Below are positions 49,073-63,479 of a stretch of DNA of 64,000 nt, in pieces (the stretch's first letter is position 1; each line of letters opens with the position of its first letter). The notes under the pieces are model-generated. The model was given only the letters and a program-made list of their open reading frames with translations. It did no database searches and was not told the DNA's origin. The translations under genes were made by a program, and so were the position numbers. The stretch is from IMG/VR virus record IMGVR_UViG_3300032236_001859, positions 124,001 to 188,000 of that record, one strand, 5' to 3'.

Positions 49073-52000
49073 TCAGGGCACCTTGGCGTTCAGCGACATC
49101 GGGATGGCATCCCAGGTGACGCCGCCATCGAGGGTAGTCATCCCAATGATGTCGACCCCGGAAGCCGTGAGCACAGCGGCGATACCGCCGGACCAACGTG
49201 TATTCGCTGGGAAGTTGAAAGTCTGGGAACCCCCGTTGGTGATGTGGAGGACAACCGTCTTGGAAACCCCCGATGCCGGGAGGTTCGAGAACGCCAGGGT
49301 CACCGCTCCGGTAACCGTCATGGTGATCCGCGTCGCGGTGAGACAGTTAATCGTGATTGTCCCAGCACCCGTGTTACCAATTGCATTCACGGGTTCGTTT
49401 ACGTTTTTGATAATGAGTGTGCCGCCAACGGAGACGTCTCCGCCGGCGTATATGGAGCCCAGGAGACCCATGCCACCCGCTGATGTAATGGACCCCGTCA
49501 ATGTGCTCACCGATGCGGCCGCCGACGTGACTATTAAGGCGCCTGCCCCTGGGGACGCCGAAAACGCACCACCGATTTGAAGACCACCATCACCCCAGAT
49601 ACGAACCTTCTCAGTGGTCAAGATGGTGCCGGGGGTTGTTGTCCAGAGGCCGATGCGGGTGCCCTGTGCGGCGTCTGTCCAGTTCTCAGCAGTGAAGATC
49701 GAGACGAACCCACGCGCCGCAGATGAGTAACCCGTGGCCCCGTAACCCCACGCTGAGAGGTTGGTGATTTCATCGCCAGCCTGGAGTGCACTGGGTGCGG
49801 TCAGGGTACCCCGACATGCGCGTCCCGCGAATACCGCGTAACCGCCGCCGATGCCCATGGCGACATCGGCGAGAACACGGGTGACCCCTGCGTTACCATT
49901 ACCATTGATGACCTGTGCGATTGTACCCGCAGGGGCCGCTGGTGCCGTGATCCCTGTAGCCAAGACTTTGAGGCCACCAAGGGTGCCCACACCCCCAGCA
50001 GTGAGTGCGCCACCGACGTTGAGAGCACCGCCGATGCCGACACCACCGGTGACCACAAGGGCGCCATTGGCCGCAGTGGTCGATACCGTGGTATCCCCGA
50101 AGCGGACGAGACCCAGACCAGTCTGAATCGCGTAATTGGTTTGACCGAAAGTGATGTCCTCGAGGAGGAGCCCATAGGCCGTGGTCAGGGTTCCCGCGGA
50201 ACCCCCGAGGGATCCATAGAACAATGCCGCAGTGGTACAGGTACCCCCCGCGGTGTCCATGTAGAACTCGGAGTCGATGCCATAGAACCCACTAAGGGTC
50301 CCCGCCGTCGTCGATACCGTGAGATCCGCACGATACCCGTAAATGACTCCGAAGTTATATCCCCCGTACAGACGCTGGGAAACCGTGTCGCCCATGTATC
50401 GCCCATTACGGGATACCGTGGGGGTAATGTTGACTTCAAGGTAGCGTGCCGTGCGGTCCACGGTGGCATTAGGGGCATATGAGATGACTTGCTTGATGCC
50501 ACCGACCATGTTGAGCGCGGAGACCCCAGTGGCCCCCACGGCAACCGAGGTATCCCCAAGGGTGACCAAACCGGTACCCGTGTAGATCGCATAGTTCGTG
50601 GTGGCCCCAGTGATACTGGGGAGATAGAGCCCGTATCCTGTGGTGATGGTGCCCGCGGTGTACGACCAGTTGCCTCTGAACAACGATGCGGCACCAACTG
50701 TGGACCCCGCACAGTTGAATGATAACGAGGTCCGGTACCCAATAATCGAGTTGACTGTGCCTGCTGTCTTCGTGTCAGTCAGCGTGGTGTTCTCACCCAC
50801 TGCGATACTGAAGTCCTCGGCTCCCGTGAGTGCAATGGAGTGGTACTGACTATAGAACGCCCCAATCGAGGAACTCAAGGGGTTCAGGGTCACACTGTCA
50901 TAGATACCGTAGACGGTCCCCGTGAGATGCCCCAGGGTGCCATACAGGGTACGAATGCTGCCAGTAAGATTCAGGGCACCTGGAGTCGTGCTATCCGTGG
51001 TCGCCGTGCTCGTCGAGTTCAGGGTGCCCGCAGCAAAGATGTCTCCACCGGCGCCGATACCCCCGGCGACCTTCAGCGCACCGGTGACCGCGCTAATTGA
51101 CGCCGTCGTATTCGCAATGGTGAGACCACCAGTGGCCAGTGTGCTATTGTATGAGAAATTGGTGGATCCCGTGAGGATGCCGTCACCACCTCCAAACCCG
51201 ACGAGACCTGTGGCCAGCGCTGCCGTGATCGTGCAACTGAGAACCCCAAGTGCGGAGAGGTTGAGCCCAGTCCCGATCGAGATCTCTTCAATCGCACCGG
51301 GATCCGCGGAGAACCTGCCAAGGACTCGGGCTGTATTCATGGTGAGCCCAGAAGACCCCACGGCCCCATTGAGGGCACCATCAGTGATCCCATAACCACT
51401 CAGGGTGGTGGGGAGATCCGAACCAATGTGATTCCAGCTCAACGAGGGAATATCGGTTTCGACTAGAGCTCGGAACGCAGGGACTGCAGAGGATCCCAGG
51501 GGATCACTGGGCCCCGCGAAGACAAGACCCGGGGACTGAACCGCCCATTCCGCGCTGAGATCCCCTAACGTGGTCACCGGGGAGAACGTGATGCTGAACT
51601 CAGGTGGCAACACGAGTCCAACGGAGGTCACCGTACCGGTACCCAGGATGGGCGCCCATGCCGAACCCGTGTAGTGGACATAGGAATGCGTGGCGCGGTT
51701 GAAGACAAAAACGCCTTCAGCTGCTGGGGTGAACACCCAGGCGCCGTCACGATATGCGGCTAAAGCATTGGGATGCCCGAACCAGGCCCCCGTGGGGAGT
51801 GTGCCCGTGATCCAGCGCTGTTCTGCACTCGGGGACCCTGGGGGTGTATTTGTGATGGCTTGAACGGGGCCACCCCAGAACCCATCAGCGATTCTGCGAT
51901 CGACGACCTGACGTGTGGTCAAATGGGCATCTGCGGTAGCCGCGATACCCGCGATATTGGCTACGAAGGGGTGGAGACCGTCGGTGGTGACAACGTCAGT

Positions 52001-52093
52001 CTCCAGCGTGCTCGTCGCGATAGGATTTGTTGCGGAGACTCGACGCAGCTGCCTGCCGTCAAAGAATACCGGCTTCTGAGGAGTGCTTGGCAT
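49073..52093 (-). CDS. Tail fibre protein with N-terminal DUF2793-like domain
   Basis: TPPGSPSAEQRWI...PTGAWFGHPNALA..RDGAWVFTPAAEG (DUF2793-like); three ST.TGAL.V.GG.GIGG repeats; common phage fibre C-terminal domain (TLAFSN...NFPANTRWSGG...GVDII...DGGVTW). Confidence 0.75.
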   Translation of the reverse strand: MPSTPQKPVFFDGRQLRRVSATNPIATSTLETDVVTTDGLHPFVANIAGIAATADAHLTTRQVVDRRIADGFWGGPVQAITNTPPGSPSAEQRWITGTLPTGAWFGHPNALAAYRDGAWVFTPAAEGVFVFNRATHSYVHYTGSAWAPILGTGTVTSVGLVLPPEFSITFSPVTTLGDLSAEWAVQSPGLVFAGPSDPLGSSAVPAFRALVETDIPSLSWNHIGSDLPTTLSGYGITDGALNGAVGSSGLTMNTARVLGRFSADPGAIEEISIGTGLNLSALGVLSCTITAALATGLVGFGGGDGILTGSTNFSYNSTLATGGLTIANTTASISAVTGALKVAGGIGAGGDIFAAGTLNSTSTATTDSTTPGALNLTGSIRTLYGTLGHLTGTVYGIYDSVTLNPLSSSIGAFYSQYHSIALTGAEDFSIAVGENTTLTDTKTAGTVNSIIGYRTSLSFNCAGSTVGAASLFRGNWSYTAGTITTGYGLYLPSITGATTNYAIYTGTGLVTLGDTSVAVGATGVSALNMVGGIKQVISYAPNATVDRTARYLEVNITPTVSRNGRYMGDTVSQRLYGGYNFGVIYGYRADLTVSTTAGTLSGFYGIDSEFYMDTAGGTCTTAALFYGSLGGSAGTLTTAYGLLLEDITFGQTNYAIQTGLGLVRFGDTTVSTTAANGALVVTGGVGIGGALNVGGALTAGGVGTLGGLKVLATGITAPAAPAGTIAQVINGNGNAGVTRVLADVAMGIGGGYAVFAGRACRGTLTAPSALQAGDEITNLSAWGYGATGYSSAARGFVSIFTAENWTDAAQGTRIGLWTTTPGTILTTEKVRIWGDGGLQIGGAFSASPGAGALIVTSAAASVSTLTGSITSAGGMGLLGSIYAGGDVSVGGTLIIKNVNEPVNAIGNTGAGTITINCLTATRITMTVTGAVTLAFSNLPASGVSKTVVLHITNGGSQTFNFPANTRWSGGIAAVLTASGVDIIGMTTLDGGVTWDAIPMSLNAKVP

Positions 52094-55226: not shown

Positions 55227-58200
55227 TCAGGCGTGCTGTAAGGTGCAGGCTCCACCGGCACATGCCATCTCGGGTTGCGCCCCCTTGGTACCATCGGTTT
55301 CCTCAACCATCAGGGAGTAATCGACATCGCGCCAGTTCCGGGATAGACGTTCCCAGAGATGGAGATTGTTGACTTCCTTGAGGCAATACGTCATCCGCTT
55401 CAGAGCAGCGACACGATCTGCATCGGGGGTAGATGTGGTCAGCAACGCTGGGTACTGGAAGTAATTTGTGGCGAACTGTACGGCCCTGCGGACCCAATCC
55501 TTCTTGAGTTCGTGGACATGCTCGTAGGCCTCACGGATGGCATCGGGTAGCGCGTTGGGATCCGCGGGATACGGAACTCCGTTGGCAAGAATCGAGGCTT
55601 CACCGAGCCCCATCACGGTATCGCATGCCAACCAGAGGTTGTTACCGAAGGCGTGGAGCCCATCGACGATGAGACCAGATGCAAAGAAGGCACCGCGGCC
55701 ATAGCGCTCCAGGATTTCACTCTCGGTACGGACCTCACAGAACGGGGCCTGGGGATAATCGAGATCCCCTGAGGTCCCCAGGATACTGACTCCCGTGAAG
55801 GACTCCCGGTGCTCGTAGATGTAACGTGCGGCGTCTTCCTCTTGGTTCTGACGAATCGTGATCGTGTTGGAGACATTGTGGTGCAGCCAGGGCTTCACAG
55901 CACGCTCGGGCACACTGCCAGCTGCAACCCAGTTGTCCTGGGTGAGCTTGACGTACTCGAGCTGCTTGAGCCCATTGACCTCACGCCGCGTCAGGGCTTC
56001 ATCGGAGGCCTCGATGCAGAACGTGATCACCGCGGTGTTCCCGTTGGGTTCCCACACCGAGCGTTCAACGGCATCGGGGTTGTGAACCTTGAAGTATTGG
56101 AAGGGGGCCTCGTTGACGTTGGCCTGGGCTCTGCGGAAGTACCGCTTGGCGTGTTGAGCATGGATCCCACTCGATGTCCCGAGAAGGCATGACGTTGATC
56201 CCGCGGGTTTAACACAGGTCGCCCGTGCCGTGGGCCGGATACCCAGCCGGGGTGCCAGATCAGCGTTGACATCGAGGATGAGCTTGGCGAGGTCACGCTG
56301 CCGCTGGGGATCAAAGGACTGCGAGGGGTTGTCCATCATCCCAGTCATGGAGACCCCGAGGAGGGCCTCACGTTTCGCGATACACTCGCTGACATTACCG
56401 AGGTAGTCGAACTTGGTATAGCCGGCCTGGAGAGTGCCCAGGATCGCCGCTGCGGTGCACGCACGTCCCCAGTCCTTATCGGTACGGCAGGCCTTGGCGT
56501 TGACTTCACAGAGATTACAAAAGCTCCACCCTGAGATCTCTACGTTTGCATATTCAACGACTTCTACGGAATGTTCCCCGTTGATCTCATCGAGATCTTT
56601 GTAGGAAATCGCTGGGTACATCCCGGTCTCCACGCAGTTCGAGACACTATGACCTCCTGTCCAGTAAGTGTGACTCTCATTGTCAACTGTGATATCATAC
56701 ACCTCCATATCACCAAGCGAAGTAACTGATCGAATAGCATAGGTATCCTGCGTGCGCCCTGAAATCCGTATGTCGCATGCAGCTGATAAGCGAGATACCT
56801 TGCTAGAGTGGATAAACCCTATCAGTTTTGCGAACTTACAACGGTCGACGCTGATATTGATGTCGTAGCTTTCTTTGCACTCATACACCCCATTACTAAA
56901 CTCGACGTCGTGCGCCCTGTTAGTAGTGAAATAGCTGCGAATACCGAGAGATGACAACGCAGTCTGTACATCATCTCGCAAACCAGGGCTACACGTCTTC
57001 AGCGTAACTCTATTAGCAACGACACTTCCATTTGCAGAGTACAGCCCACGTAAAACAGAACACAGGATATCCTGCCCAGATTGTAAAAACCGCTGTGGGA
57101 TCCTACGCGATGGGATGGTTGGCATGTCTTCTTGGGTGAGCAACGAGAAGTCTTGAACTTTGAACAGCCTGGTGCTCCCACCGTAACCCTCCCTGGATAC
57201 CCATGGCATACAGTTGAAAATCTCCTGATCGCCCGCACCTATGTTGAGGAGTAGACCTCCCCCAGCCTTGTGCCACGTGCCATCGCCAAGCAACAACCCA
57301 ACCATAATGTTTGCATCGTTATGCACAGGGGCTTCGCCGACATCCGCTGTAAGCACGTCTATAGATTCTGCCAACCCAACCTCGACCTTCTCCCCATGCT
57401 GCTCCACCCGATGATTAGCCGTACCTACAAATACACCTGCAGACGTGCGGTATTCCGATACCGGCTTTATTCCAGTGCTCCATTTCCTCAAAACACGAGT
57501 CCAGCCCTCGCGGCTCCAAATCACGCTACCTACATCGATATCTGCAAAAGTGCGCAAACCATCGGGGGTAAGAACAGTAGCACAGGCGGGTTGACAGGGG
57601 TTCACCATGAGCTCGGAGCTATCCGACCACACGAACCCGGGCTCCCCGTACTGGCGGCGTGCCAGCATGAAGATGTCATGGAAGGCTTCCCAAGTAGTCT
57701 CACCCCGGATCAACATCGCCGAGTTATTAGAACGCGCCCGCTGGGGGTTGTCCTGCATCCAGTTCCCAGTCTTCGCGTTCATCATTTCGGGGTCATCAAC
57801 ACTGAACAAGCAAATCGTGGCGCTACGACGAACCCCACCGGCGAGGACGGCATCCGAGGCGTGCATGATGATGTCGTAGACATCGATGGGGCGGAGGTGG
57901 CAGTCTTCACCATGGCACCGGGTCAACGCGGTATCAAGGACCCCACGAATCTTTTCCAGGGATGCCGAGAGAGGCCCAGGCCCTGGAGCCTTGCCTGCAC
58001 CCGTGCTCAGACTCGAGCCCTGGTTACGGATGCGCGAGTAATCAAAGCTGACATGGCTGCCGACATAATCGGAGAAGAACCCGGGGTGCTGGAAGGACAC
58101 CTTGGCATCATTGCCTGGTGCGGTTTCTTCGGCGAACTCTTGCATCCCGACACCCAGGCATCCATAGGAGGCCAGGAGAACACCGAGGGCATCAGCCCAG

Positions 58201-58637
58201 CCTTCAACACTGTCGGCAACCGTGAACACCTTGATCTGGTGTTTATCCACCGCGATTAACTTGGGCAGCTTGGCGACGTGGTGGCGTTGCACCGAGAACC
58301 CGGTGCCGCAACCACAGAGCAGAAGATATAGGCATTCCTGGAAGAACCGGGGGCGATCCGCATAGGATCCCGAACAATTGAACGCTCTGGCCTCTTTCCT
58401 CAAGATAGGGGAACCACCGAATTGAAGTGCTCTCTGGGAGCCCAGGACCAGGCCATCTTTCATGGCTTCCAGACAGAAACTCAACTCGGCTTCGATATCA
58501 AACCCTTTATATTTCGTGCGGTGCATTTCGATGACGCGTTCAAAACTCTCACTTGGTATTTCGCGTCGATTCAGTTCAGGTAAAAATCGTCCATAAGACG
58601 CCGCGAACTTGTATGCTGCTAGTGATTGCGTGGTCAT
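55227..58637 (-). CDS. nrdJ: Class II (adenosylcobalamin-dependent) ribonucleotide reductase, monomeric RTPR-like, intein-containing
   Basis: Start moved to MTTQSL (GGAG SD). GSQRALQFGG, FNCS, LLLCGCGTGFSV, LAGGVRRSA, NPQRARSNNS, GEPG, NP|CVE, FCNLCEVN, TCVKPAGSTS, HNVSNT; C-terminal redox pair ACAGGAC. Confidence 0.88.
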   Translation of the reverse strand: MTTQSLAAYKFAASYGRFLPELNRREIPSESFERVIEMHRTKYKGFDIEAELSFCLEAMKDGLVLGSQRALQFGGSPILRKEARAFNCSGSYADRPRFFQECLYLLLCGCGTGFSVQRHHVAKLPKLIAVDKHQIKVFTVADSVEGWADALGVLLASYGCLGVGMQEFAEETAPGNDAKVSFQHPGFFSDYVGSHVSFDYSRIRNQGSSLSTGAGKAPGPGPLSASLEKIRGVLDTALTRCHGEDCHLRPIDVYDIIMHASDAVLAGGVRRSATICLFSVDDPEMMNAKTGNWMQDNPQRARSNNSAMLIRGETTWEAFHDIFMLARRQYGEPGFVWSDSSELMVNPCQPACATVLTPDGLRTFADIDVGSVIWSREGWTRVLRKWSTGIKPVSEYRTSAGVFVGTANHRVEQHGEKVEVGLAESIDVLTADVGEAPVHNDANIMVGLLLGDGTWHKAGGGLLLNIGAGDQEIFNCMPWVSREGYGGSTRLFKVQDFSLLTQEDMPTIPSRRIPQRFLQSGQDILCSVLRGLYSANGSVVANRVTLKTCSPGLRDDVQTALSSLGIRSYFTTNRAHDVEFSNGVYECKESYDINISVDRCKFAKLIGFIHSSKVSRLSAACDIRISGRTQDTYAIRSVTSLGDMEVYDITVDNESHTYWTGGHSVSNCVETGMYPAISYKDLDEINGEHSVEVVEYANVEISGWSFCNLCEVNAKACRTDKDWGRACTAAAILGTLQAGYTKFDYLGNVSECIAKREALLGVSMTGMMDNPSQSFDPQRQRDLAKLILDVNADLAPRLGIRPTARATCVKPAGSTSCLLGTSSGIHAQHAKRYFRRAQANVNEAPFQYFKVHNPDAVERSVWEPNGNTAVITFCIEASDEALTRREVNGLKQLEYVKLTQDNWVAAGSVPERAVKPWLHHNVSNTITIRQNQEEDAARYIYEHRESFTGVSILGTSGDLDYPQAPFCEVRTESEILERYGRGAFFASGLIVDGLHAFGNNLWLACDTVMGLGEASILANGVPYPADPNALPDAIREAYEHVHELKKDWVRRAVQFATNYFQYPALLTTSTPDADRVAALKRMTYCLKEVNNLHLWERLSRNWRDVDYSLMVEETDGTKGAQPEMACAGGACTLQHA
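56637..57596 (-). mobile_element. Intein (320 aa) with LAGLIDADG endonuclease in RNR
   Basis: Begins CQPACATVLTPDG, has block B GTANH, LAGLIDADG blocks VGLLLGDG and LRGLYSANG, and ends VYDITVDNESHTYWTGGHSVSN followed by Cys. Removal restores VNP-CVE. Confidence 0.93.
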
Positions 58638-58724
58638 ATAACACTCCATGTAGTCGTTGGTTTTTGTGTCACAGGGGTTACATCCTGTGGGGGTTTACTC
58701 TCAGTCAAGTCCGTTGGTGTCCGC

Positions 58725-59009
58725 CTAGGTGCGACGCCGGGTGGGTTGAGTTGCCGCGCGTTCTGTTTCCAGAATGGCTACGCGTGTTTTCAAGTCTTCC
58801 ACTGAATTGAGCAGATCAACACAGAGATCAAGGAAGGGTGCAGTCTCCTTGAGTTTCTTTTTAATCGGAGTAGACGTCGACGGTGCACCCGGAGCCCGGG
58901 TTGCCGGAGTCTTCCTGGCACCGACGCCGCTACTGGCGACCATGCGATCGGTGTGTGGTTTGTACTCCGTGGGCTTCCGCCGCGGAGTCTGACTAATCTT
59001 TTTTTTCAT
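58725..59009 (-). CDS. Small basic protein with C-terminal coiled coil
   Basis: 94 aa; K/R/P-rich N-terminus; LLNSVEDLKTRVAILE. Confidence 0.65.
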   Translation of the reverse strand: MKKKISQTPRRKPTEYKPHTDRMVASSGVGARKTPATRAPGAPSTSTPIKKKLKETAPFLDLCVDLLNSVEDLKTRVAILETERAATQPTRRRT

Positions 59010-59012
59010 TGA

Positions 59013-59207
59013 TCACCCGACGGCGGCCAGCGCAGCAGTAAAGGCTACTCGCGGGAATCTCACCGTGGCGGCATCGAGGCCTCGAAAGCGCACATTCACA
59101 AAGTTGGAATCGTCTGCGGGGGCGTACCAAGTGATCTTAGTTAGATCATAGGCGGGGCCGTTGGCCCCATTGGGATACCAGATTTGTGGGGATGTGACAA
59201 GCGCCAT
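59013..59207 (-). CDS. Small protein, copy of a repeated ~55-aa domain
   Basis: 64 aa; AAGG SD; GPAYDL...VNVRFR...VRFPRVAFTAAL. Confidence 0.7.
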   Translation of the reverse strand: MALVTSPQIWYPNGANGPAYDLTKITWYAPADDSNFVNVRFRGLDAATVRFPRVAFTAALAAVG

Positions 59208-59279
59208 ATAATTACCTTGATATTATCGGGGTCAAAGATGGCTGGATTCTGGCAGGGCTTCCCGGGGTGCAAGTCGGGC

Positions 59280-59474
59280 TCAGAACCCTGACCCCGCAGC
59301 GGCATCCCTTGCCGCTGCCCAGGCCACGGCATCAAAGGTGACCAGGACATTTGGTTGTGAGGCAAATCTGACTACGACTTTGTCGGTGCCATACGGCATC
59401 CACATAATGGCTTCTCGCACGTTATACGTGGAACCACCGACAACAGGGGTAAAGAAATTATCTGTGAAAGCCAT
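59280..59474 (-). CDS. Small protein, copy of a repeated ~55-aa domain
   Basis: 64 aa; TAATG overlap with the upstream gene; GGSTYNV...VVVRFA...VTFDAVAWAAAR. Confidence 0.7.
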   Translation of the reverse strand: MAFTDNFFTPVVGGSTYNVREAIMWMPYGTDKVVVRFASQPNVLVTFDAVAWAAARDAAAGSGF

Positions 59475-62400
59475 TATGACCTCGACTTCGACGCCTGCAT
59501 GGCGGTCTCAAAGGCGTTGAGATCAAACCCGACGTTGACATCTGCGGCATCGGCGAAGCGAACCAGCGCAGGGGTACTCCGGTTCCATGTCGCCACCCAA
59601 TCCAAGTTATAGTACACGCTACCACCACCGGGATTCCACCAGGGCATCCCAGATGGCAGCGCGGCCAGGAAAGTTGCACGCGCAATACGAATAGGCGGAT
59701 TCACTGCACACTGGGGGTCTTCCGCCATCGCAGAGGACGCCATCCAGACATCAACATAACCCAGGGCGGGGTAGTCGACATAGCGCTGAACAAAGATAAC
59801 ATTGAGTGTGGTCTGCCCCACGATTAGATCTGGCAACGCCGCAGCGATCGCTGGGCTTCCAAGTAAAGTAGGGCTACTTGATCTCGAGAAATCCCATTGG
59901 GTCAAGAAAGCGCTGCGACTCAGCGTTATAGGCGAATATGGGCTTCCGAAGAAAATCGCAGTAATGGTTTGTGTGTCATCTTTGAACGAGACAACCCAAC
60001 GGAGATCATAGACGGCACCACCACTGGTCTGGAGTTCGTGTGGGCTCCCAAAGATCACGTTGTGGTTGTCGCCTTTGTCCTTGATGCCACTACGCGCATA
60101 CACCGGGCTACCCGTGCTTGCATCACACCAGGCCACACCGAGTGAAGAATTACCCTTGATATAACTACTCGAGCTCGCACCAGACCTACTTACCAGATTC
60201 CACACACTCGCAGGCTGGAGATCTACACCTTCAATCTTGATCTGCCCGCCCCGCAAGGTGGCCCCTGCGAGATGCAGCAGTGCCGCCGATGTCAGGGTGA
60301 GCGCACCGTAGGCGTCGAGAACCCCGGCATTGAGGTCCACACTGGATCCCGCAAGCGCCGTGAAGGCCCCCGTGGTCAAGACGACATCATTGTATAGATC
60401 GAGAATCGTGCCGGCGCCAGAAACCAGAATGGAAGGGAATGCAGCGGGGAGCCCGCCGCTGACTTGAAACTGCTGGCGGACCCCACCAGTGAAATCAACT
60501 CTGGGGACCCCATTGGAGACCACGGTGACGTTAGCCCCAATTACGAGCTTCCCAGTGAACTTTGCTAGGGATACGCCTACACCAGTGTTGGGTGCAGCCG
60601 CGATGCCCCAGCGAGTTGTGCCCCCGGTACGCCCCAGGGTGACATCGCCATAAGTGATATCGACGACATCCGCGTTTCCGACTGGGTAATCAAATAAGTA
60701 ATCGCTACCAGCTCCGGCGACATACGTGTACGTGAAACTGGAGATATTGGCGACGACTCCTCCACGTGCCTGGATCTGAATGACTTTGTTGCCTGATGTC
60801 CGCTTGGCAATGAGACCTGCGATATTCACGGTGCCGGGACCAACGAACTGACAGTCAAGGTTCGCTGCGGAACCCGTGGATTCAACGGTGAGTCCACCTG
60901 CTAAGTTGACGCTCCCATTAAACGTGAGTCTGCATAGATTTGTCCATATACCCTTGAGAGTCATGGGCGCCGTGAAGACGTGGCCAGAAGGCACGGAATA
61001 AAGCGTGTTTCCGCTGGGCCCCTCTCGGAACTCAATTGGGCACGTGAACACAACTGCAGTGGGTGCCGGCAACGGAGTCGACTTCAGGGTGTCAAGGATC
61101 AATGTGGATGCCCCGGCTATCGTACTCGAATCACCCGATATTAACGTGGGATAGCTCGAGCCTCCACCGAGTAATCGTAGATTACCTGAGGCCAGCGTGA
61201 GTGTGACATTGGTACCCAAGGTAATACTAAGAAGATTCGTACCGGGGCCTGCCACTGTGATGGTCATCAGCTTCTCGGTACCGCCCATATTTAACACTGT
61301 GGAGTAGTTACATACCAACCGAGATGGGATCTTTTGAGAATCCGTAGCACTGAAGACTACTGTGGCCCCCACACAATCCACAGTCAGGATACCACCCCAG
61401 CTATTACTGACATCGGTCGCAGTAAACTTGGAAAGATCAAACGTGTAGTTGTCTCTGCGTAGTGTGACGTTCTGACTGGCGAGATTCAGGGTCAACCCAG
61501 TTTCAACAACCGTAAGTGTGAATGCCCAGACGAGCGCAGAATCAACGCGGAGACCGAGAACCTTGGAGCCCAGGGTGAGGTCTCCGGTACCGGTAGGGGA
61601 ATCGCCGCCGATGGCGAAGTAGTGGTTTGTGTTCAGACCGCTGGCCGTGAGCCCACCAGCAAACGTGTTGGCCCCGGTGACATGGAATCCATTGGCGGTA
61701 GCCAATGTGTTCGCAGTGGGCTGGGATACGCAAGACAGCCCTGCGGAGTACCCGATCTCGCTGCCAATGATGCCCGACAAGTTGACCCGGCATCCCGCAC
61801 TGATCGACATGATTCTGAACGTGCGAGTCCCCGCACCATTGAGCAGAGTTGTCGCACCGGTGAAATTCACCGTGCTCTGACCATTGACGTAGAGGTCAAC
61901 TGTACCCCCGACTTCAATGGCACCACTGAACGTGAAATTCGTATTGACCCCAGCCGGCATCGAGAGCGTGGAGGTCGTGTTCCCGATACCCAGGGCCATA
62001 TTGGTGGCAAAGGTTCGAGTGGTCCCCGCAGTGATATACCAGTTGAAATAGGAGCCCTCGTAGAGGGACATCTTTCCGGTTCCAAATGAATGTGTGGTCG
62101 TCGCCCCGGAATAACTCAGAGAGAGCTGGACCCCTGCTGCGACTATCGTGTTCCGGTGAGCCGGGAACGTCGTCGAGCTCGAATGGGTGTAGGTACCACC
62201 GTTGACATAGATGTCGTAGTTTCCAGTGACACTGCCTGTCGTGGTCAAGAACCCCGAACTCGTATTATCGATCGTAAAGTTTGTCTTGAGACGTAGCGGC
62301 GCCGAGATCGTAACAGTGTTTGAACCCGAGACCTGGTAGTAGCGTGAGATCGAGAGGTTACCCCCATTCGATGTCGCCAGGGTCTTCCCACCACTGGAGT

Positions 62401-62842
62401 CACTGGTGATAGTCAGGATCGTGGTATCCGCGTAAAACGTGAATACCTTGGTACCCGAGTTGGTGATATGAAGAGTGGTAATGACTTGTTCTGCGAAATT
62501 ATAGGTCGCCGTGGATTCGATGACCCAGCGCCCCGTGGCACCATTTAAGGTCATCTCGTTGGAGAGCGCCAGCGCGGTGACCCCTGAAGCCATGACAGCG
62601 AAATCAAATGTGGCCAGACTGAGGGTGCCCGTGTAGCCCGTGAACACAGCGGTATTCACGGTGAGGTTCGCACTCAACGTGCACGCCGCGTTGTGACCAG
62701 TACCACTGCCATCAAAACGGATGTCGTCGGCGGCTAGAGACCCCGCGGCAGCCGCAGTGGTCCCCCCGATGTCCGTGGTGTAGTTCTGACGCTTATTCGC
62801 GTCGGAGTCACCGACTTTGTTGTGCCAGTAAAGAGTGGCCAT
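59474..62842 (-). CDS. 1122-aa beta-helical fibre/adhesin-like protein with two C-terminal copies of the ~55-aa domain
   Basis: Begins MATLYW; T/S/G-rich beta-strand repeats including VTGANTFAGGLT; C-terminal GGAVYDL... and GGSVYYNL...VRFA...VGFDLNAF. Confidence 0.7.
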   Translation of the reverse strand: MATLYWHNKVGDSDANKRQNYTTDIGGTTAAAAGSLAADDIRFDGSGTGHNAACTLSANLTVNTAVFTGYTGTLSLATFDFAVMASGVTALALSNEMTLNGATGRWVIESTATYNFAEQVITTLHITNSGTKVFTFYADTTILTITSDSSGGKTLATSNGGNLSISRYYQVSGSNTVTISAPLRLKTNFTIDNTSSGFLTTTGSVTGNYDIYVNGGTYTHSSSTTFPAHRNTIVAAGVQLSLSYSGATTTHSFGTGKMSLYEGSYFNWYITAGTTRTFATNMALGIGNTTSTLSMPAGVNTNFTFSGAIEVGGTVDLYVNGQSTVNFTGATTLLNGAGTRTFRIMSISAGCRVNLSGIIGSEIGYSAGLSCVSQPTANTLATANGFHVTGANTFAGGLTASGLNTNHYFAIGGDSPTGTGDLTLGSKVLGLRVDSALVWAFTLTVVETGLTLNLASQNVTLRRDNYTFDLSKFTATDVSNSWGGILTVDCVGATVVFSATDSQKIPSRLVCNYSTVLNMGGTEKLMTITVAGPGTNLLSITLGTNVTLTLASGNLRLLGGGSSYPTLISGDSSTIAGASTLILDTLKSTPLPAPTAVVFTCPIEFREGPSGNTLYSVPSGHVFTAPMTLKGIWTNLCRLTFNGSVNLAGGLTVESTGSAANLDCQFVGPGTVNIAGLIAKRTSGNKVIQIQARGGVVANISSFTYTYVAGAGSDYLFDYPVGNADVVDITYGDVTLGRTGGTTRWGIAAAPNTGVGVSLAKFTGKLVIGANVTVVSNGVPRVDFTGGVRQQFQVSGGLPAAFPSILVSGAGTILDLYNDVVLTTGAFTALAGSSVDLNAGVLDAYGALTLTSAALLHLAGATLRGGQIKIEGVDLQPASVWNLVSRSGASSSSYIKGNSSLGVAWCDASTGSPVYARSGIKDKGDNHNVIFGSPHELQTSGGAVYDLRWVVSFKDDTQTITAIFFGSPYSPITLSRSAFLTQWDFSRSSSPTLLGSPAIAAALPDLIVGQTTLNVIFVQRYVDYPALGYVDVWMASSAMAEDPQCAVNPPIRIARATFLAALPSGMPWWNPGGGSVYYNLDWVATWNRSTPALVRFADAADVNVGFDLNAFETAMQASKSRS

Positions 62843-62852
62843 TGTGCTGGCC

Positions 62853-63479
62853 TCAGAACTTGATCAGACCGGTATGGTACCCGTAGGACTTCGAGGTGTA
62901 GTCTCCAAAGCAGCAGAGATGGAAGGCGGTGAGACTATCGAGGGCATCGGTCCAATCCGACTTCAGCCGCCCGGTTACATCCTCGGTGCCCCCAGATGGA
63001 ATGCTTTGGATCCAGGACAACAACTTGATGTTGATCTCGGAGCTCAGGTAATAGGCGTCCTGGCTCAAGGTGACCACTGCGCGTGCAATGGAAAGGGCTT
63101 GGGAATTGATCTCATTGGCTGGTGTTGAATTACCGGCATCCATCCAAACCGCGCATGTCGTGGCTACTGCTGACTTCGAGGTCTTGGGATCCACTGCTGC
63201 AATGGTGGGTGCGGAATCATTGTTGACGGAATAGAGACGCCAGAGATCGGTGCCCAACTTGTACCATTGATCCACGGTGCGGCCGTCGCCACGCCAGTTC
63301 TCATAACGCGCCGGGCGCACCCCAGGGGCGACACCAAGCGCGGGAGTCATGTCGGCAAGCCAGACATCACGGAATACTCGCCCGATCTGGGCAAGCTCTT
63401 TCTGCAAGCGTAGGATATTGCGCGTGGTGTCCTGAATGCGGGATTCGGTTTCGCGTACCCGTGTTTCGATGATTGACAT
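62853..63479 (-). CDS. Hypothetical protein with N-terminal coiled coil
   Basis: 208 aa; AGGAG SD. Confidence 0.7.
   Translation of the reverse strand: MSIIETRVRETESRIQDTTRNILRLQKELAQIGRVFRDVWLADMTPALGVAPGVRPARYENWRGDGRTVDQWYKLGTDLWRLYSVNNDSAPTIAAVDPKTSKSAVATTCAVWMDAGNSTPANEINSQALSIARAVVTLSQDAYYLSSEINIKLLSWIQSIPSGGTEDVTGRLKSDWTDALDSLTAFHLCCFGDYTSKSYGYHTGLIKF

What the first reader, a model, noticed from the sequence alone, without database searches (positions are those of the whole stretch)
59013..60040. Unrecognised ~55-aa domain in four copies: twice in the adhesin C-terminus and twice as free downstream mini-genes
Seen alignment: A GGAVYDLRWVVSF...TAIFFG...ITLSRSAFLTQW (about 59890-60035); B GGSVYYNLDWVATW...ALVRFA...VGFDLNAFETAM (adhesin C-terminus); C GGSTYNVREAIMW...VVVRFA...VTFDAVAWAAAR (59280..59474); D GPAYDLTKITWY...VNVRFR...VRFPRVAFTAAL (59013..59207). 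Consensus G-x(2-3)-Y-[DN]-[LV]...[VA]-x-VRF...V-x-F-x3-A-[FW]. C is coupled to the adhesin by TAATG. The beta-rich + C-terminal helix pattern resembles PH-like/LytTR-like folds. Inference: a hetero-oligomeric fibre-tip, chaperone or adaptor system built from fused and free paralogues.
Basis: seen in the sequence. Interest (0 to 1): 0.65.

Follow-up and report, generated by a model that had tools for sequence, protein, structure and literature searches.

The report
Five-paralogue phage fibre connector cassette
An unnamed ~60-residue protein domain occurs five times in a row in this 216-kb phage (three copies at the end of a giant adhesin-like protein, two as separate 64-residue genes), and the same ordered set recurs in distantly related phages fused to different tail or surface proteins, which suggests a new kind of docking hub for phage fibres.

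Summary
The four copies (A and B in the 1122-aa protein, free genes C and D) are homologous. All six profile pairs beat every column shuffle (z 4-9.7). An HMM built without one subfamily finds that subfamily as the next best hit among 3011 ORFs of the phage. A degenerate fifth copy, M, lies between A and B (hhalign 95%, P 4e-8).

No member matches Pfam, PHROGs or PDB sequences. A profile search of 1.84 billion proteins found about 82 true clusters: 43 minis, 27 proteins with the domain at the N-terminus, and a few A-M-B modules.

In most close relatives the A-M-B module is a free 191-aa gene, so the beta-solenoid "adhesin" is a lineage-specific fusion. The ordered set A-M-B-C-D recurs in four divergent lineages, and copies group by position rather than by lineage. 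Passengers (beta-solenoid, F5/8C+LamG, Ig, "tail protein") are fused to A, C or D.

AF2 of C gives a beta-meander plus C-terminal helix (pLDDT 86) with no significant fold match. A module+C complex prediction gave weak support only.

Best reading: a heteromeric connector hub for virion surface proteins. This is inferred, not shown. A chaperone or fibre-tip role is unlikely.

The parts
59474..62842 (-). P0001, 1122-aa 'adhesin': a beta-solenoid-like passenger (aa 1-930) fused to the A-M-B module (aa 931-1122)
   Evidence: ORF and translation. No Pfam or PHROG match. Language-model look-alikes of aa 1-930 are PATR-repeat beta-solenoid clusters, score 0.92, which is a lead only.
60053..62842 (-). 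Passenger part (aa 1-930). Present only in the window and L002 lineages, together with the upstream 208-aa gene.
   Evidence: In L003, L005 and L007 the module is a free 191/192-aa gene that starts exactly at copy A.
59873..60052 (-). Copy A (aa 931-990), the most divergent type. It is followed by a conserved linker (SR..P..LG.PAI..LPDL).
   Evidence: HMM 79 bits. Leave-one-out E 3e-3. The A type forms one split in the tree, support 80/83. Linker invariants are shown.
59660..59821 (-). Copy M (aa ~1008-1061), a degenerate fifth copy with an insertion before the last strand
   Evidence: hhalign against a module-free domain profile: probability 95%, P 3.9e-8. M of relatives hits the HMM directly, iE 1e-4 in P0018 and 3e-3 in L022.
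59477..59656 (-). Copy B (aa 1063-1122), the C-terminus of P0001
   Evidence: HMM 86 bits. Leave-one-out E 1.4e-5. The B type forms a clade, support 96/91.
59280..59474 (-). Gene C (P0002, 64 aa), a single domain. Its start overlaps the P0001 stop (TAATG).
   Evidence: Leave-one-out E 2e-8. dN/dS 0.03-0.16. AF2 model with pLDDT 86.
59208..59279 (-). C-D spacer of 72 nt with an invariant 15-mer CAGAATCC[A/T]GCCATC at 59237..59251
   Evidence: Alignment of five relatives. The motif is unique in the genome apart from one copy with two mismatches.
59013..59207 (-). Gene D (P0003, 64 aa), a single domain. It is the type that forms the N-terminus of most tail and virion-type family members elsewhere.
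   Evidence: Leave-one-out E 6e-6. dN/dS 0.04-0.21. Subtype scores. The D type forms a clade, support 94/91.
58725..59009 (-). 94-aa gene that starts 3 nt after D. It has a basic N-terminus and a near-invariant C-terminal amphipathic helix. It is restricted to this clade, so membership in the system is uncertain.
   Evidence: It is syntenic in all close relatives. No relative was found in the other lineages. Its 3' half is conserved at nucleotide level.

Best explanation
The locus encodes one ordered set of five paralogous ~60-residue domains. Each domain is a beta-meander of three to four strands packed by a C-terminal helix. A, M and B lie on one chain; C and D lie on separate chains.

I infer that the five domains pack against each other into one compact heteromeric unit. 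That unit would act as a connector or docking hub on the virion. The variable parts fused to it would be interchangeable surface-binding passengers. Here the passenger is a 930-residue beta-solenoid on the N-terminal side of A. Elsewhere it is lectin, Ig or 'tail protein' modules on A, C or D.

In this phage C and D carry no passenger, so they would fill their positions in the hub as bare stubs.

Shown: homology of the five copies; their conserved order and positional orthology across lineages; the variable fusion points; purifying selection.

Inferred: physical association of the copies; virion location (tail or head is not resolved); the anchoring role.
For: The family has about 82 true clusters with no Pfam, PHROG or PDB sequence match.

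The cassette without the adhesin part is the conserved unit in close relatives.

The same order A-M-B-C-D is found in four lineages that share about 30-45% identity:
- window clade: [+/- beta-solenoid]-A-M-B | C | D
- L017: A-M-B-C fused, followed by a D-like gene
- L018: A-M-B-C plus a 570-aa extension
- L022: free A-M-B, then a C mini, then D as the N-terminus of a 798-aa He_PIG 'tail protein'
- L028 and the P0023 locus: F5/8C+LamG-A-M-B | C-400-aa 'tail protein' | D mini
.

In the tree the copies group by position, not by lineage. The labels need 3 changes, which is the minimum, against a shuffled mean of 13.5. Support for A is 80/83, for B 96/91 and for D 94/91.

The fusion of C to the module in P0018 and P0019 and the conserved 1-nt stop/start overlap argue for a 1:1 association.

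Passengers match PHROG tail or virion families (phrog_5939, 8763, 438, 10356, 12736) and Pfam F5_F8_type_C, Laminin_G_3 and He_PIG.

Complex prediction of module + C gave ipSAE 0.46 (runs 0.42-0.51) against a best control of 0.00. The tool's verdict was 'weak support'. The mark was reached by 58 of 80 solved complexes and 2 of 110 mismatched pairs. At 0.60 or under it was reached by only 7 of those 80 solved complexes and by both mismatches that passed. The runs agree in at least 76% of contacts and the partner's pLDDT is at least 77.
Against: - There is no experimental evidence and no cultured relative. No INPHARED phage carries the domain by tblastn.
- The complex score is in the range where passes are more often wrong than right unless the guess was likely beforehand.
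- In the window clade the cassette lies next to nucleotide-metabolism and glycosyltransferase genes, not inside the recognisable tail-fibre block at 43-52 kb.
- Tandem domains can be beads on a string without mutual contacts.
- The AF2 model of the module alone was poor, pLDDT 52.
- Not every locus with D-type fibres shows an A-M-B module within the DNA held (L014, L020).
Confidence: 0.5

Rival explanations
1. Independent ligand-binding modules. Each copy would be a small autonomous binding domain, for example for a host surface glycan. The copies would be strung together for avidity, without forming a defined hetero-complex. C and D would be soluble or decoration-type binders.
For: The domain co-occurs with lectin-type domains (F5_F8_type_C, Laminin_G_3) and Ig domains. 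Free tandem forms exist, D-D and D-C (P0021, P0094, P0029). The fold is a generic small beta-meander plus helix.
Against: Five distinct position-specific types are kept in fixed order across lineages. That is unexpected for interchangeable avidity repeats. The domain sits at the N-terminus of 27 tail or virion-type clusters, whereas binding heads are usually distal. Stand-alone 64-aa binders with no effector would have no evident use.
Confidence: 0.2
2. Fibre-assembly chaperones or caps. C and D would be Tfa-like helpers that fold or cap the C-terminus of the adhesin. They would resemble it only because they dock by strand or helix mimicry.
For: C and D are small genes placed directly downstream and translationally coupled to a large fibre-like gene. 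The module + C prediction was weakly positive: 0.46 against a best control of 0.00, with the counts given under the best explanation.
Against: Most close relatives keep C and D but have no adhesin part. The C and D types are themselves the N-terminal domains of large proteins elsewhere (P0049, P0071). No Caudo_TAP or other chaperone family matches.
Confidence: 0.12
3. Non-virion function. The domains would be small intracellular proteins, for example LytTR-like nucleic-acid binders or host-takeover or anti-defence factors. The fusions to large proteins would be incidental.
For: The best shape match in the ESM Atlas is a truncated LytTR cluster, TM 0.67, and 3d6w LytTR is among the Foldseek rows. 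The cassette sits beside RNR and an HTH gene in the window clade. A regulator-like gene often lies upstream.
Against: No LytTR Pfam match was found in 94 members. All structural matches are below significance. The fusion partners are extracellular or virion-type modules.
Confidence: 0.08

Closest known systems
Anchor-branch receptor-binding-protein systems (T4 gp10-like branching domains and N-terminal anchor domains or conserved peptides in G7C, K1-5, CBA120-like and Klebsiella phages; PMC6872550)
   Same: Conserved small structural modules sit at protein termini and join variable, horizontally exchanged binding parts to the virion or to each other. Several fibre genes in one locus share the module. 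Truncated 'stub' RBPs that keep only the attachment part are described there (KpV767, 69 aa).
   Different: There is no sequence match, and T4 gp10 is absent from the listed structural matches. Here all partners are paralogues of one ~60-aa domain in five position-specific types. The hub itself can be free of any fibre. Passengers can sit on the N-terminal side of A as well as the C-terminal side of C or D.
Tail fibre assembly proteins (Tfa / Caudo_TAP)
   Same: They are small genes placed immediately downstream of a fibre gene.
   Different: No family match was found. Tfa proteins are not paralogues of the fibre's own end. The cassette persists without a fibre.
PH-like/PTB (FERM F3) and LytTR folds
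Autotransporter-type PATR beta-solenoid adhesins (N-terminal 930 aa only)
   Same: The composition is rich in Thr, Ser, Gly and Asn and is repetitive. The language-model nearest clusters carry PF12951 PATR, score 0.92.
   Different: No Pfam PATR match was found. There is no signal peptide or beta-barrel. The protein is encoded by a phage and ends in the A-M-B module.

Membership tests
Any Pfam-A or PHROG family (domain itself) | A profile HMM match at or near the curated threshold | tested here: not met
   All 94 domain instances were scanned. Pfam gave only two unrelated single hits at E 0.017 or worse. PHROGs gave two single hits at E 0.001 or worse. The window proteins gave none.
LytTR (PF04397) | A sequence match to the LytTR profile, and a ~100-aa fold of three beta-sheets | tested here: not met
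   No PF04397 hit in 94 members. The only structural resemblance is TM 0.67 to a 60-aa truncated cluster of predicted models and Foldseek E 0.34 to 3d6w.
PH-like / PTB superfold | A seven-stranded beta-sandwich closed by a C-terminal helix | tested here: inconclusive
T4 gp10-like branching domain | Homology to T4 gp10 domains 2/3 | tested here: not met
   No Pfam or PDB sequence match. gp10 is not among the top 50 structural rows.
Tail fibre assembly protein (Caudo_TAP and relatives) | A profile match, and a helper encoded downstream of a fibre gene | tested here: not met
   The position criterion is met in the window. There is no profile match. The cassette is kept where no fibre part exists.
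KTSC domain (PF13619; the resemblance is recalled from memory only) | A profile match to PF13619 | tested here: not met
   No PF13619 hit at E 0.05 or better in any of 94 members.
PATR beta-solenoid (PF12951), N-terminal part of P0001 | A PATR repeat profile match | tested here: inconclusive
   No Pfam hit at E 1 or better. The language-model look-alikes are PATR clusters at 0.92, with 155 shared features, below the 170 typical of true members.

The most novel reading that the evidence does not exclude
A, M, B, C and D, one copy each, would close into a single pseudo-symmetric five-domain assembly. It would take the place of a homo-oligomeric anchor. The phage could then mount one, two or three different passengers at fixed, genetically addressable positions of one attachment site. 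This would be a new architectural principle for mixing receptor-binding modules. The bare minis would act as place-holders.
Probability: 0.15. Interest if true: 0.8.

Novelty: new variant of a known kind. Interest (0 to 1): 0.6.

Why it matters
Receptor-binding and surface proteins decide phage host range, and they are exchanged as modules. The joints that let modules be swapped are known for only a few model systems. This family is an unannotated joint candidate found in about 82 clusters of uncultured phages.

The pattern is unusually informative. Five position-specific paralogues are kept in order while the passengers move between three different attachment points.

If the five domains form one hub, it gives three things:
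- a compact target for structural work, about 320 residues in total
- a rule for annotating dozens of 'hypothetical' 60-75-aa phage genes and the N-termini of tail-like proteins
- a possible scaffold for engineering multi-specific phage fibres in laboratory phages

Tried and rejected
- blastn of the locus against INPHARED phages found no match.
- tblastn of a consensus-like mini (P0024) against INPHARED found no match.
- tblastn of family members P0047, P0049 and P0071 hit only their passenger parts, in cyanophage, Nonlabens, Tenacibaculum and Rhodococcus phages. Tenacibaculum phage pT24 has no copy.
- IMG/VR and metagenome pattern scans returned only the window's own clade and L018. A degenerate DNA pattern for PGxAYDLRKV found nothing in IMG/VR. 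P0047 found nothing. The D-type alignment was too variable for the tool.
- The word-index protein searches found only orthologues at 64-91% identity. The exhaustive profile search was therefore used, because the claim rests on the absence of relatives.
- Seven of its 89 hits are partial matches in long repeat proteins and were discarded (P0036, P0072, P0081, P0086, P0097, P0098, P0103).
- The AF2 model of the 192-aa module from six sequences was too poor to use, pLDDT 52.
- Fold searches in PDB (Foldseek and VIA-align), BFVD and the ESM Atlas gave no significant match.
- Promoter and terminator scans were at chance level. Rfam found nothing.
- The 94-aa gene has no relative next to the cassette in other lineages.
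- Only genetic code 11 was used.
Full report
**Setting.** The window is bases 124001-188000 of a 216,043-bp virus record with direct terminal repeats, so it is a jumbo phage. Almost all long ORFs in the window are on the minus strand. The finding covers four genes:
- the end of a 1122-aa ORF (P0001, 59474..62842)
- two 64-aa ORFs: C (P0002, 59280..59474) and D (P0003, 59013..59207)
- a 94-aa ORF (58725..59009)

An intein-containing ribonucleotide reductase follows at 55227..58649. The P0001 stop and the C start overlap as TAATG. None of these proteins matches Pfam or PHROGs. The DNA has no match in the INPHARED phages.

**Is the repeat real?** Single-sequence blastp between the copies is only suggestive, with E between 0.002 and 0.05 and nothing for A against B. 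I collected orthologues from seven related contigs. They share 62-91% identity, so the clade is very small.

Profile-profile alignment gives co-linear, near full-length matches for all six pairs of A, B, C and D, with P from 5.6e-6 to 1.5e-3. Each pair lies above all 60 column shuffles, z 4.0 to 9.7.

I then built HMMs from three subfamilies and searched all 3011 stop-to-stop ORFs of the phage genome. Each HMM recovered the omitted fourth subfamily as the next best hit: C 2e-8, D 6e-6, B 1.4e-5, A 3e-3. Unrelated ORFs started at E about 0.2.

The joint alignment has an invariant Tyr and Phe.

**A fifth copy.** The 70 residues between A and B share the helix motif with A and D. I added more distant module homologues (P0018, P0019, P0020, P0023). 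I compared this M profile with a 76-row domain profile from which all module rows had been removed. The match has probability 95% and P 3.9e-8 over 45 columns, with a 9-residue insertion before the last strand. In less derived relatives M hits the domain HMM directly, with iE 1e-4 in P0018 and 3e-3 in the L022 module. So P0001 ends in three copies, A-M-B, and the locus holds five.

**The 'adhesin' is a lineage-specific fusion.** In L003/L004, L005/L006 and L007/L008 the last 191-192 residues of P0001 are a free gene that begins exactly at copy A. It is followed by C (the same 1-nt overlap), D, the ~93-aa gene and RNR. Only the window and L002 have the extra 930 N-terminal residues and the 208-aa gene upstream. 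The conserved unit is therefore the cassette, not the large protein. The 930-residue part has no family match. Its language-model look-alikes are PATR-type beta-solenoids, score 0.92, which is a lead only.

**The wider family.** Word-index searches and family scans left the domain open, and the claim rests on novelty. I therefore ran the exhaustive profile search with the four-copy alignment. It found 89 representative clusters at E of 1e-3 or better. After removing 7 partial hits in long repeat proteins, about 82 remain:
- 43 single-domain proteins of 60-95 aa
- 27 proteins with the domain at the N-terminus followed by 50-730 further residues
- several free two- to four-copy proteins
- a few large proteins that end in A-type plus B-type copies (P0023 1285 aa, P0092 1387 aa, P0079 636 aa)

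None of 94 domain instances matches Pfam or PHROGs. Profiles of the domain and of the module find nothing in PDB sequences.

**What the passengers are.**
- P0023 and P0092 carry F5_F8_type_C and Laminin_G_3. P0071 carries He_PIG.
- P0049 and P0071 match PHROG 'tail protein' families (6.7e-21 and 1.6e-19). P0055 matches a baseplate wedge family.
- P0047, its paralogues and P0079 match 'virion structural protein' families.
- The C-terminal part of P0047 resembles LamG or Ig proteins by language-model features. It also resembles cyanophage virion structural proteins by tblastn.

Locus L014 has three adjacent paralogues of 405-428 aa, each with the N-terminal domain. Next come a 69-aa mini and a 400-aa protein that looks like the same kind of protein without the domain.

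**A conserved ordered set.** I scored every instance against HMMs of the window clade's A, B, C and D. A and B types occur only in modules. The D type is the N-terminal domain of most of the 400-800-aa proteins and of many minis. The C type is rarer. Four lineages that share only about 30-45% identity show the same order:
- window clade: [+/- beta-solenoid]-A-M-B | C | D
- L017: A-M-B-C in one 263-aa protein, then a D-like gene. L018: A-M-B-C plus a 570-aa extension
- L022: free A-M-B (203 aa), two genes, a C-type mini, then D as the N-terminus of the 798-aa He_PIG tail protein
- L028 and the P0023 locus: 1286-aa F5/8C protein ending in A-M-B | C-type N-terminus on a 465-aa 'tail protein' | 138-aa gene | (a TnpB insertion) | D-type mini | 1208-aa protein

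A maximum-likelihood tree of 24 copies groups them by position. Support is 80/83 for A, 96/91 for B and 94/91 for D. C as a single clade is not rejected (p-AU 0.37). The labels need 3 changes, which is the minimum, against a mean of 13.5 for shuffled labels. The five types therefore predate the divergence of these phages and have been kept together and in order, while passengers were attached to A, C or D.

**Fold.** With the 94-row alignment AF2 models C at pLDDT 86 and pTM 0.68. The model has an N-terminal arm, a beta-meander with strands around residues 17, 22-27, 32-37 and 44-48, and a C-terminal helix at 49-61. Copy A in the poorer module model shows the same order of elements. No library gives a significant match:
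- Foldseek against PDB: E 0.23 or worse (talin F3, LytTR 3d6w)
- ESM Atlas: TM 0.67 to a truncated LytTR cluster
- BFVD: E 0.099 or worse

**Do the pieces bind?** Three results point to association:
- Fusion of C to the module in P0018 and P0019 is Rosetta-stone evidence.
- The stop/start overlap is kept in all close relatives.
- One complex prediction (module with a 10-row alignment, C with 94 rows) gave ipSAE 0.46 (runs 0.42-0.51) against a best control of 0.00, verdict 'weak support'.

The mark was reached by 58 of 80 solved complexes and 2 of 110 mismatched pairs. At 0.60 or under it was reached by only 7 of those 80 solved complexes and by both mismatches that passed. The runs agree in at least 76% of contacts and the partner's pLDDT is at least 77. 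Given the prior evidence I take this as modest support.

C and D are under strong purifying selection, with dN/dS 0.03-0.21.

**Interpretation.** The best-supported reading is a heteromeric connector hub built from five paralogous domains, onto which variable surface or tail modules are fused. In this phage the beta-solenoid sits on A, while C and D are bare.

A chaperone role for the adhesin is unlikely, because the cassette persists without it. A fibre-tip role is unlikely, because the domain is N-terminal in most fibre-like members.

Several points remain open:
- whether the copies truly contact each other
- whether the hub sits on the tail or the head
- whether the 94-aa gene belongs to the system. 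It is clade-specific.

The closest known analogues in function are the anchor-branch RBP systems, with their anchor domains, T4 gp10-like docking domains and conserved N-terminal peptides. Those include truncated 69-aa RBP stubs (PMC6872550). The present family shares no detectable sequence or fold with them.

**Limits.** No cultured phage carries the family in the collections searched. Only genetic code 11 was used.

Noticed in passing
window 58640-58870 (- strand): The 3' half of the 94-aa gene and the ~75-nt leader of the RNR gene are about 95-100% identical at nucleotide level in five relatives. The neighbouring C and D genes in the same relatives have dS between 0.3 and more than 2. This points to constraint on the DNA or RNA, or to recent gene conversion. 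Rfam finds nothing. The consensus fold has only one compensatory pair.
   Followed up: partly
window 59237-59251 (- strand), in the C-D spacer: An invariant 15-mer, CAGAATCC[A/T]GCCATC, lies about 30 nt upstream of D's start in all five relatives. It is unique in the 216-kb genome apart from a copy with two mismatches at genome position 13851, which also lies about 36 nt before an ATG. It may be a phage promoter or operator.
   Followed up: partly
window 55227-58649 (-): The ribonucleotide reductase gene carries an intein. The 1132-aa orthologues hit LAGLIDADG_3. Relatives L006 and L007 have 805-816-aa versions without the intein.
   Followed up: no
window 62853-63479 (-) and 60053-62842 (-): The 208-aa gene and the first 930 codons of P0001 are present or absent as one block. 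The window and L002 have them; L003, L005 and L007 do not. The junction lies exactly at the start of copy A.
   Followed up: partly
L013 2572-3333, L014 1954-2868, L023 4456-4938, L028 5415-6017, and the P0023 locus: A 160-300-aa gene with faint HTH or sigma70 region-4 hits (weak PHROG 'late transcriptional activator' or regulator hits) lies directly upstream of the domain-bearing genes in five unrelated loci.
   Followed up: partly
L028 12023-13105 and L020 1-825: TnpB-type (Cas12f1-like_TNB) genes lie next to or inside the cassette. In L028 one sits between the C-type fibre gene and the D-type mini.
   Followed up: no
window 49073-52093 (-): A 1006-aa protein with DUF2793 (E 8.6e-13) and PHROG tail-fibre hits marks the recognisable tail-fibre block. 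It lies about 7 kb from the cassette, beyond the RNR gene.
   Followed up: no
INPHARED ON014754.1 (Pseudanabaena phage Pam2) 57610-58311: A LamG-like region similar to the passenger of P0047 is annotated there as 'botulinum neurotoxin type A'. This is probably a name carried over from the LamG-like receptor-binding fold and not a toxin.
   Followed up: no
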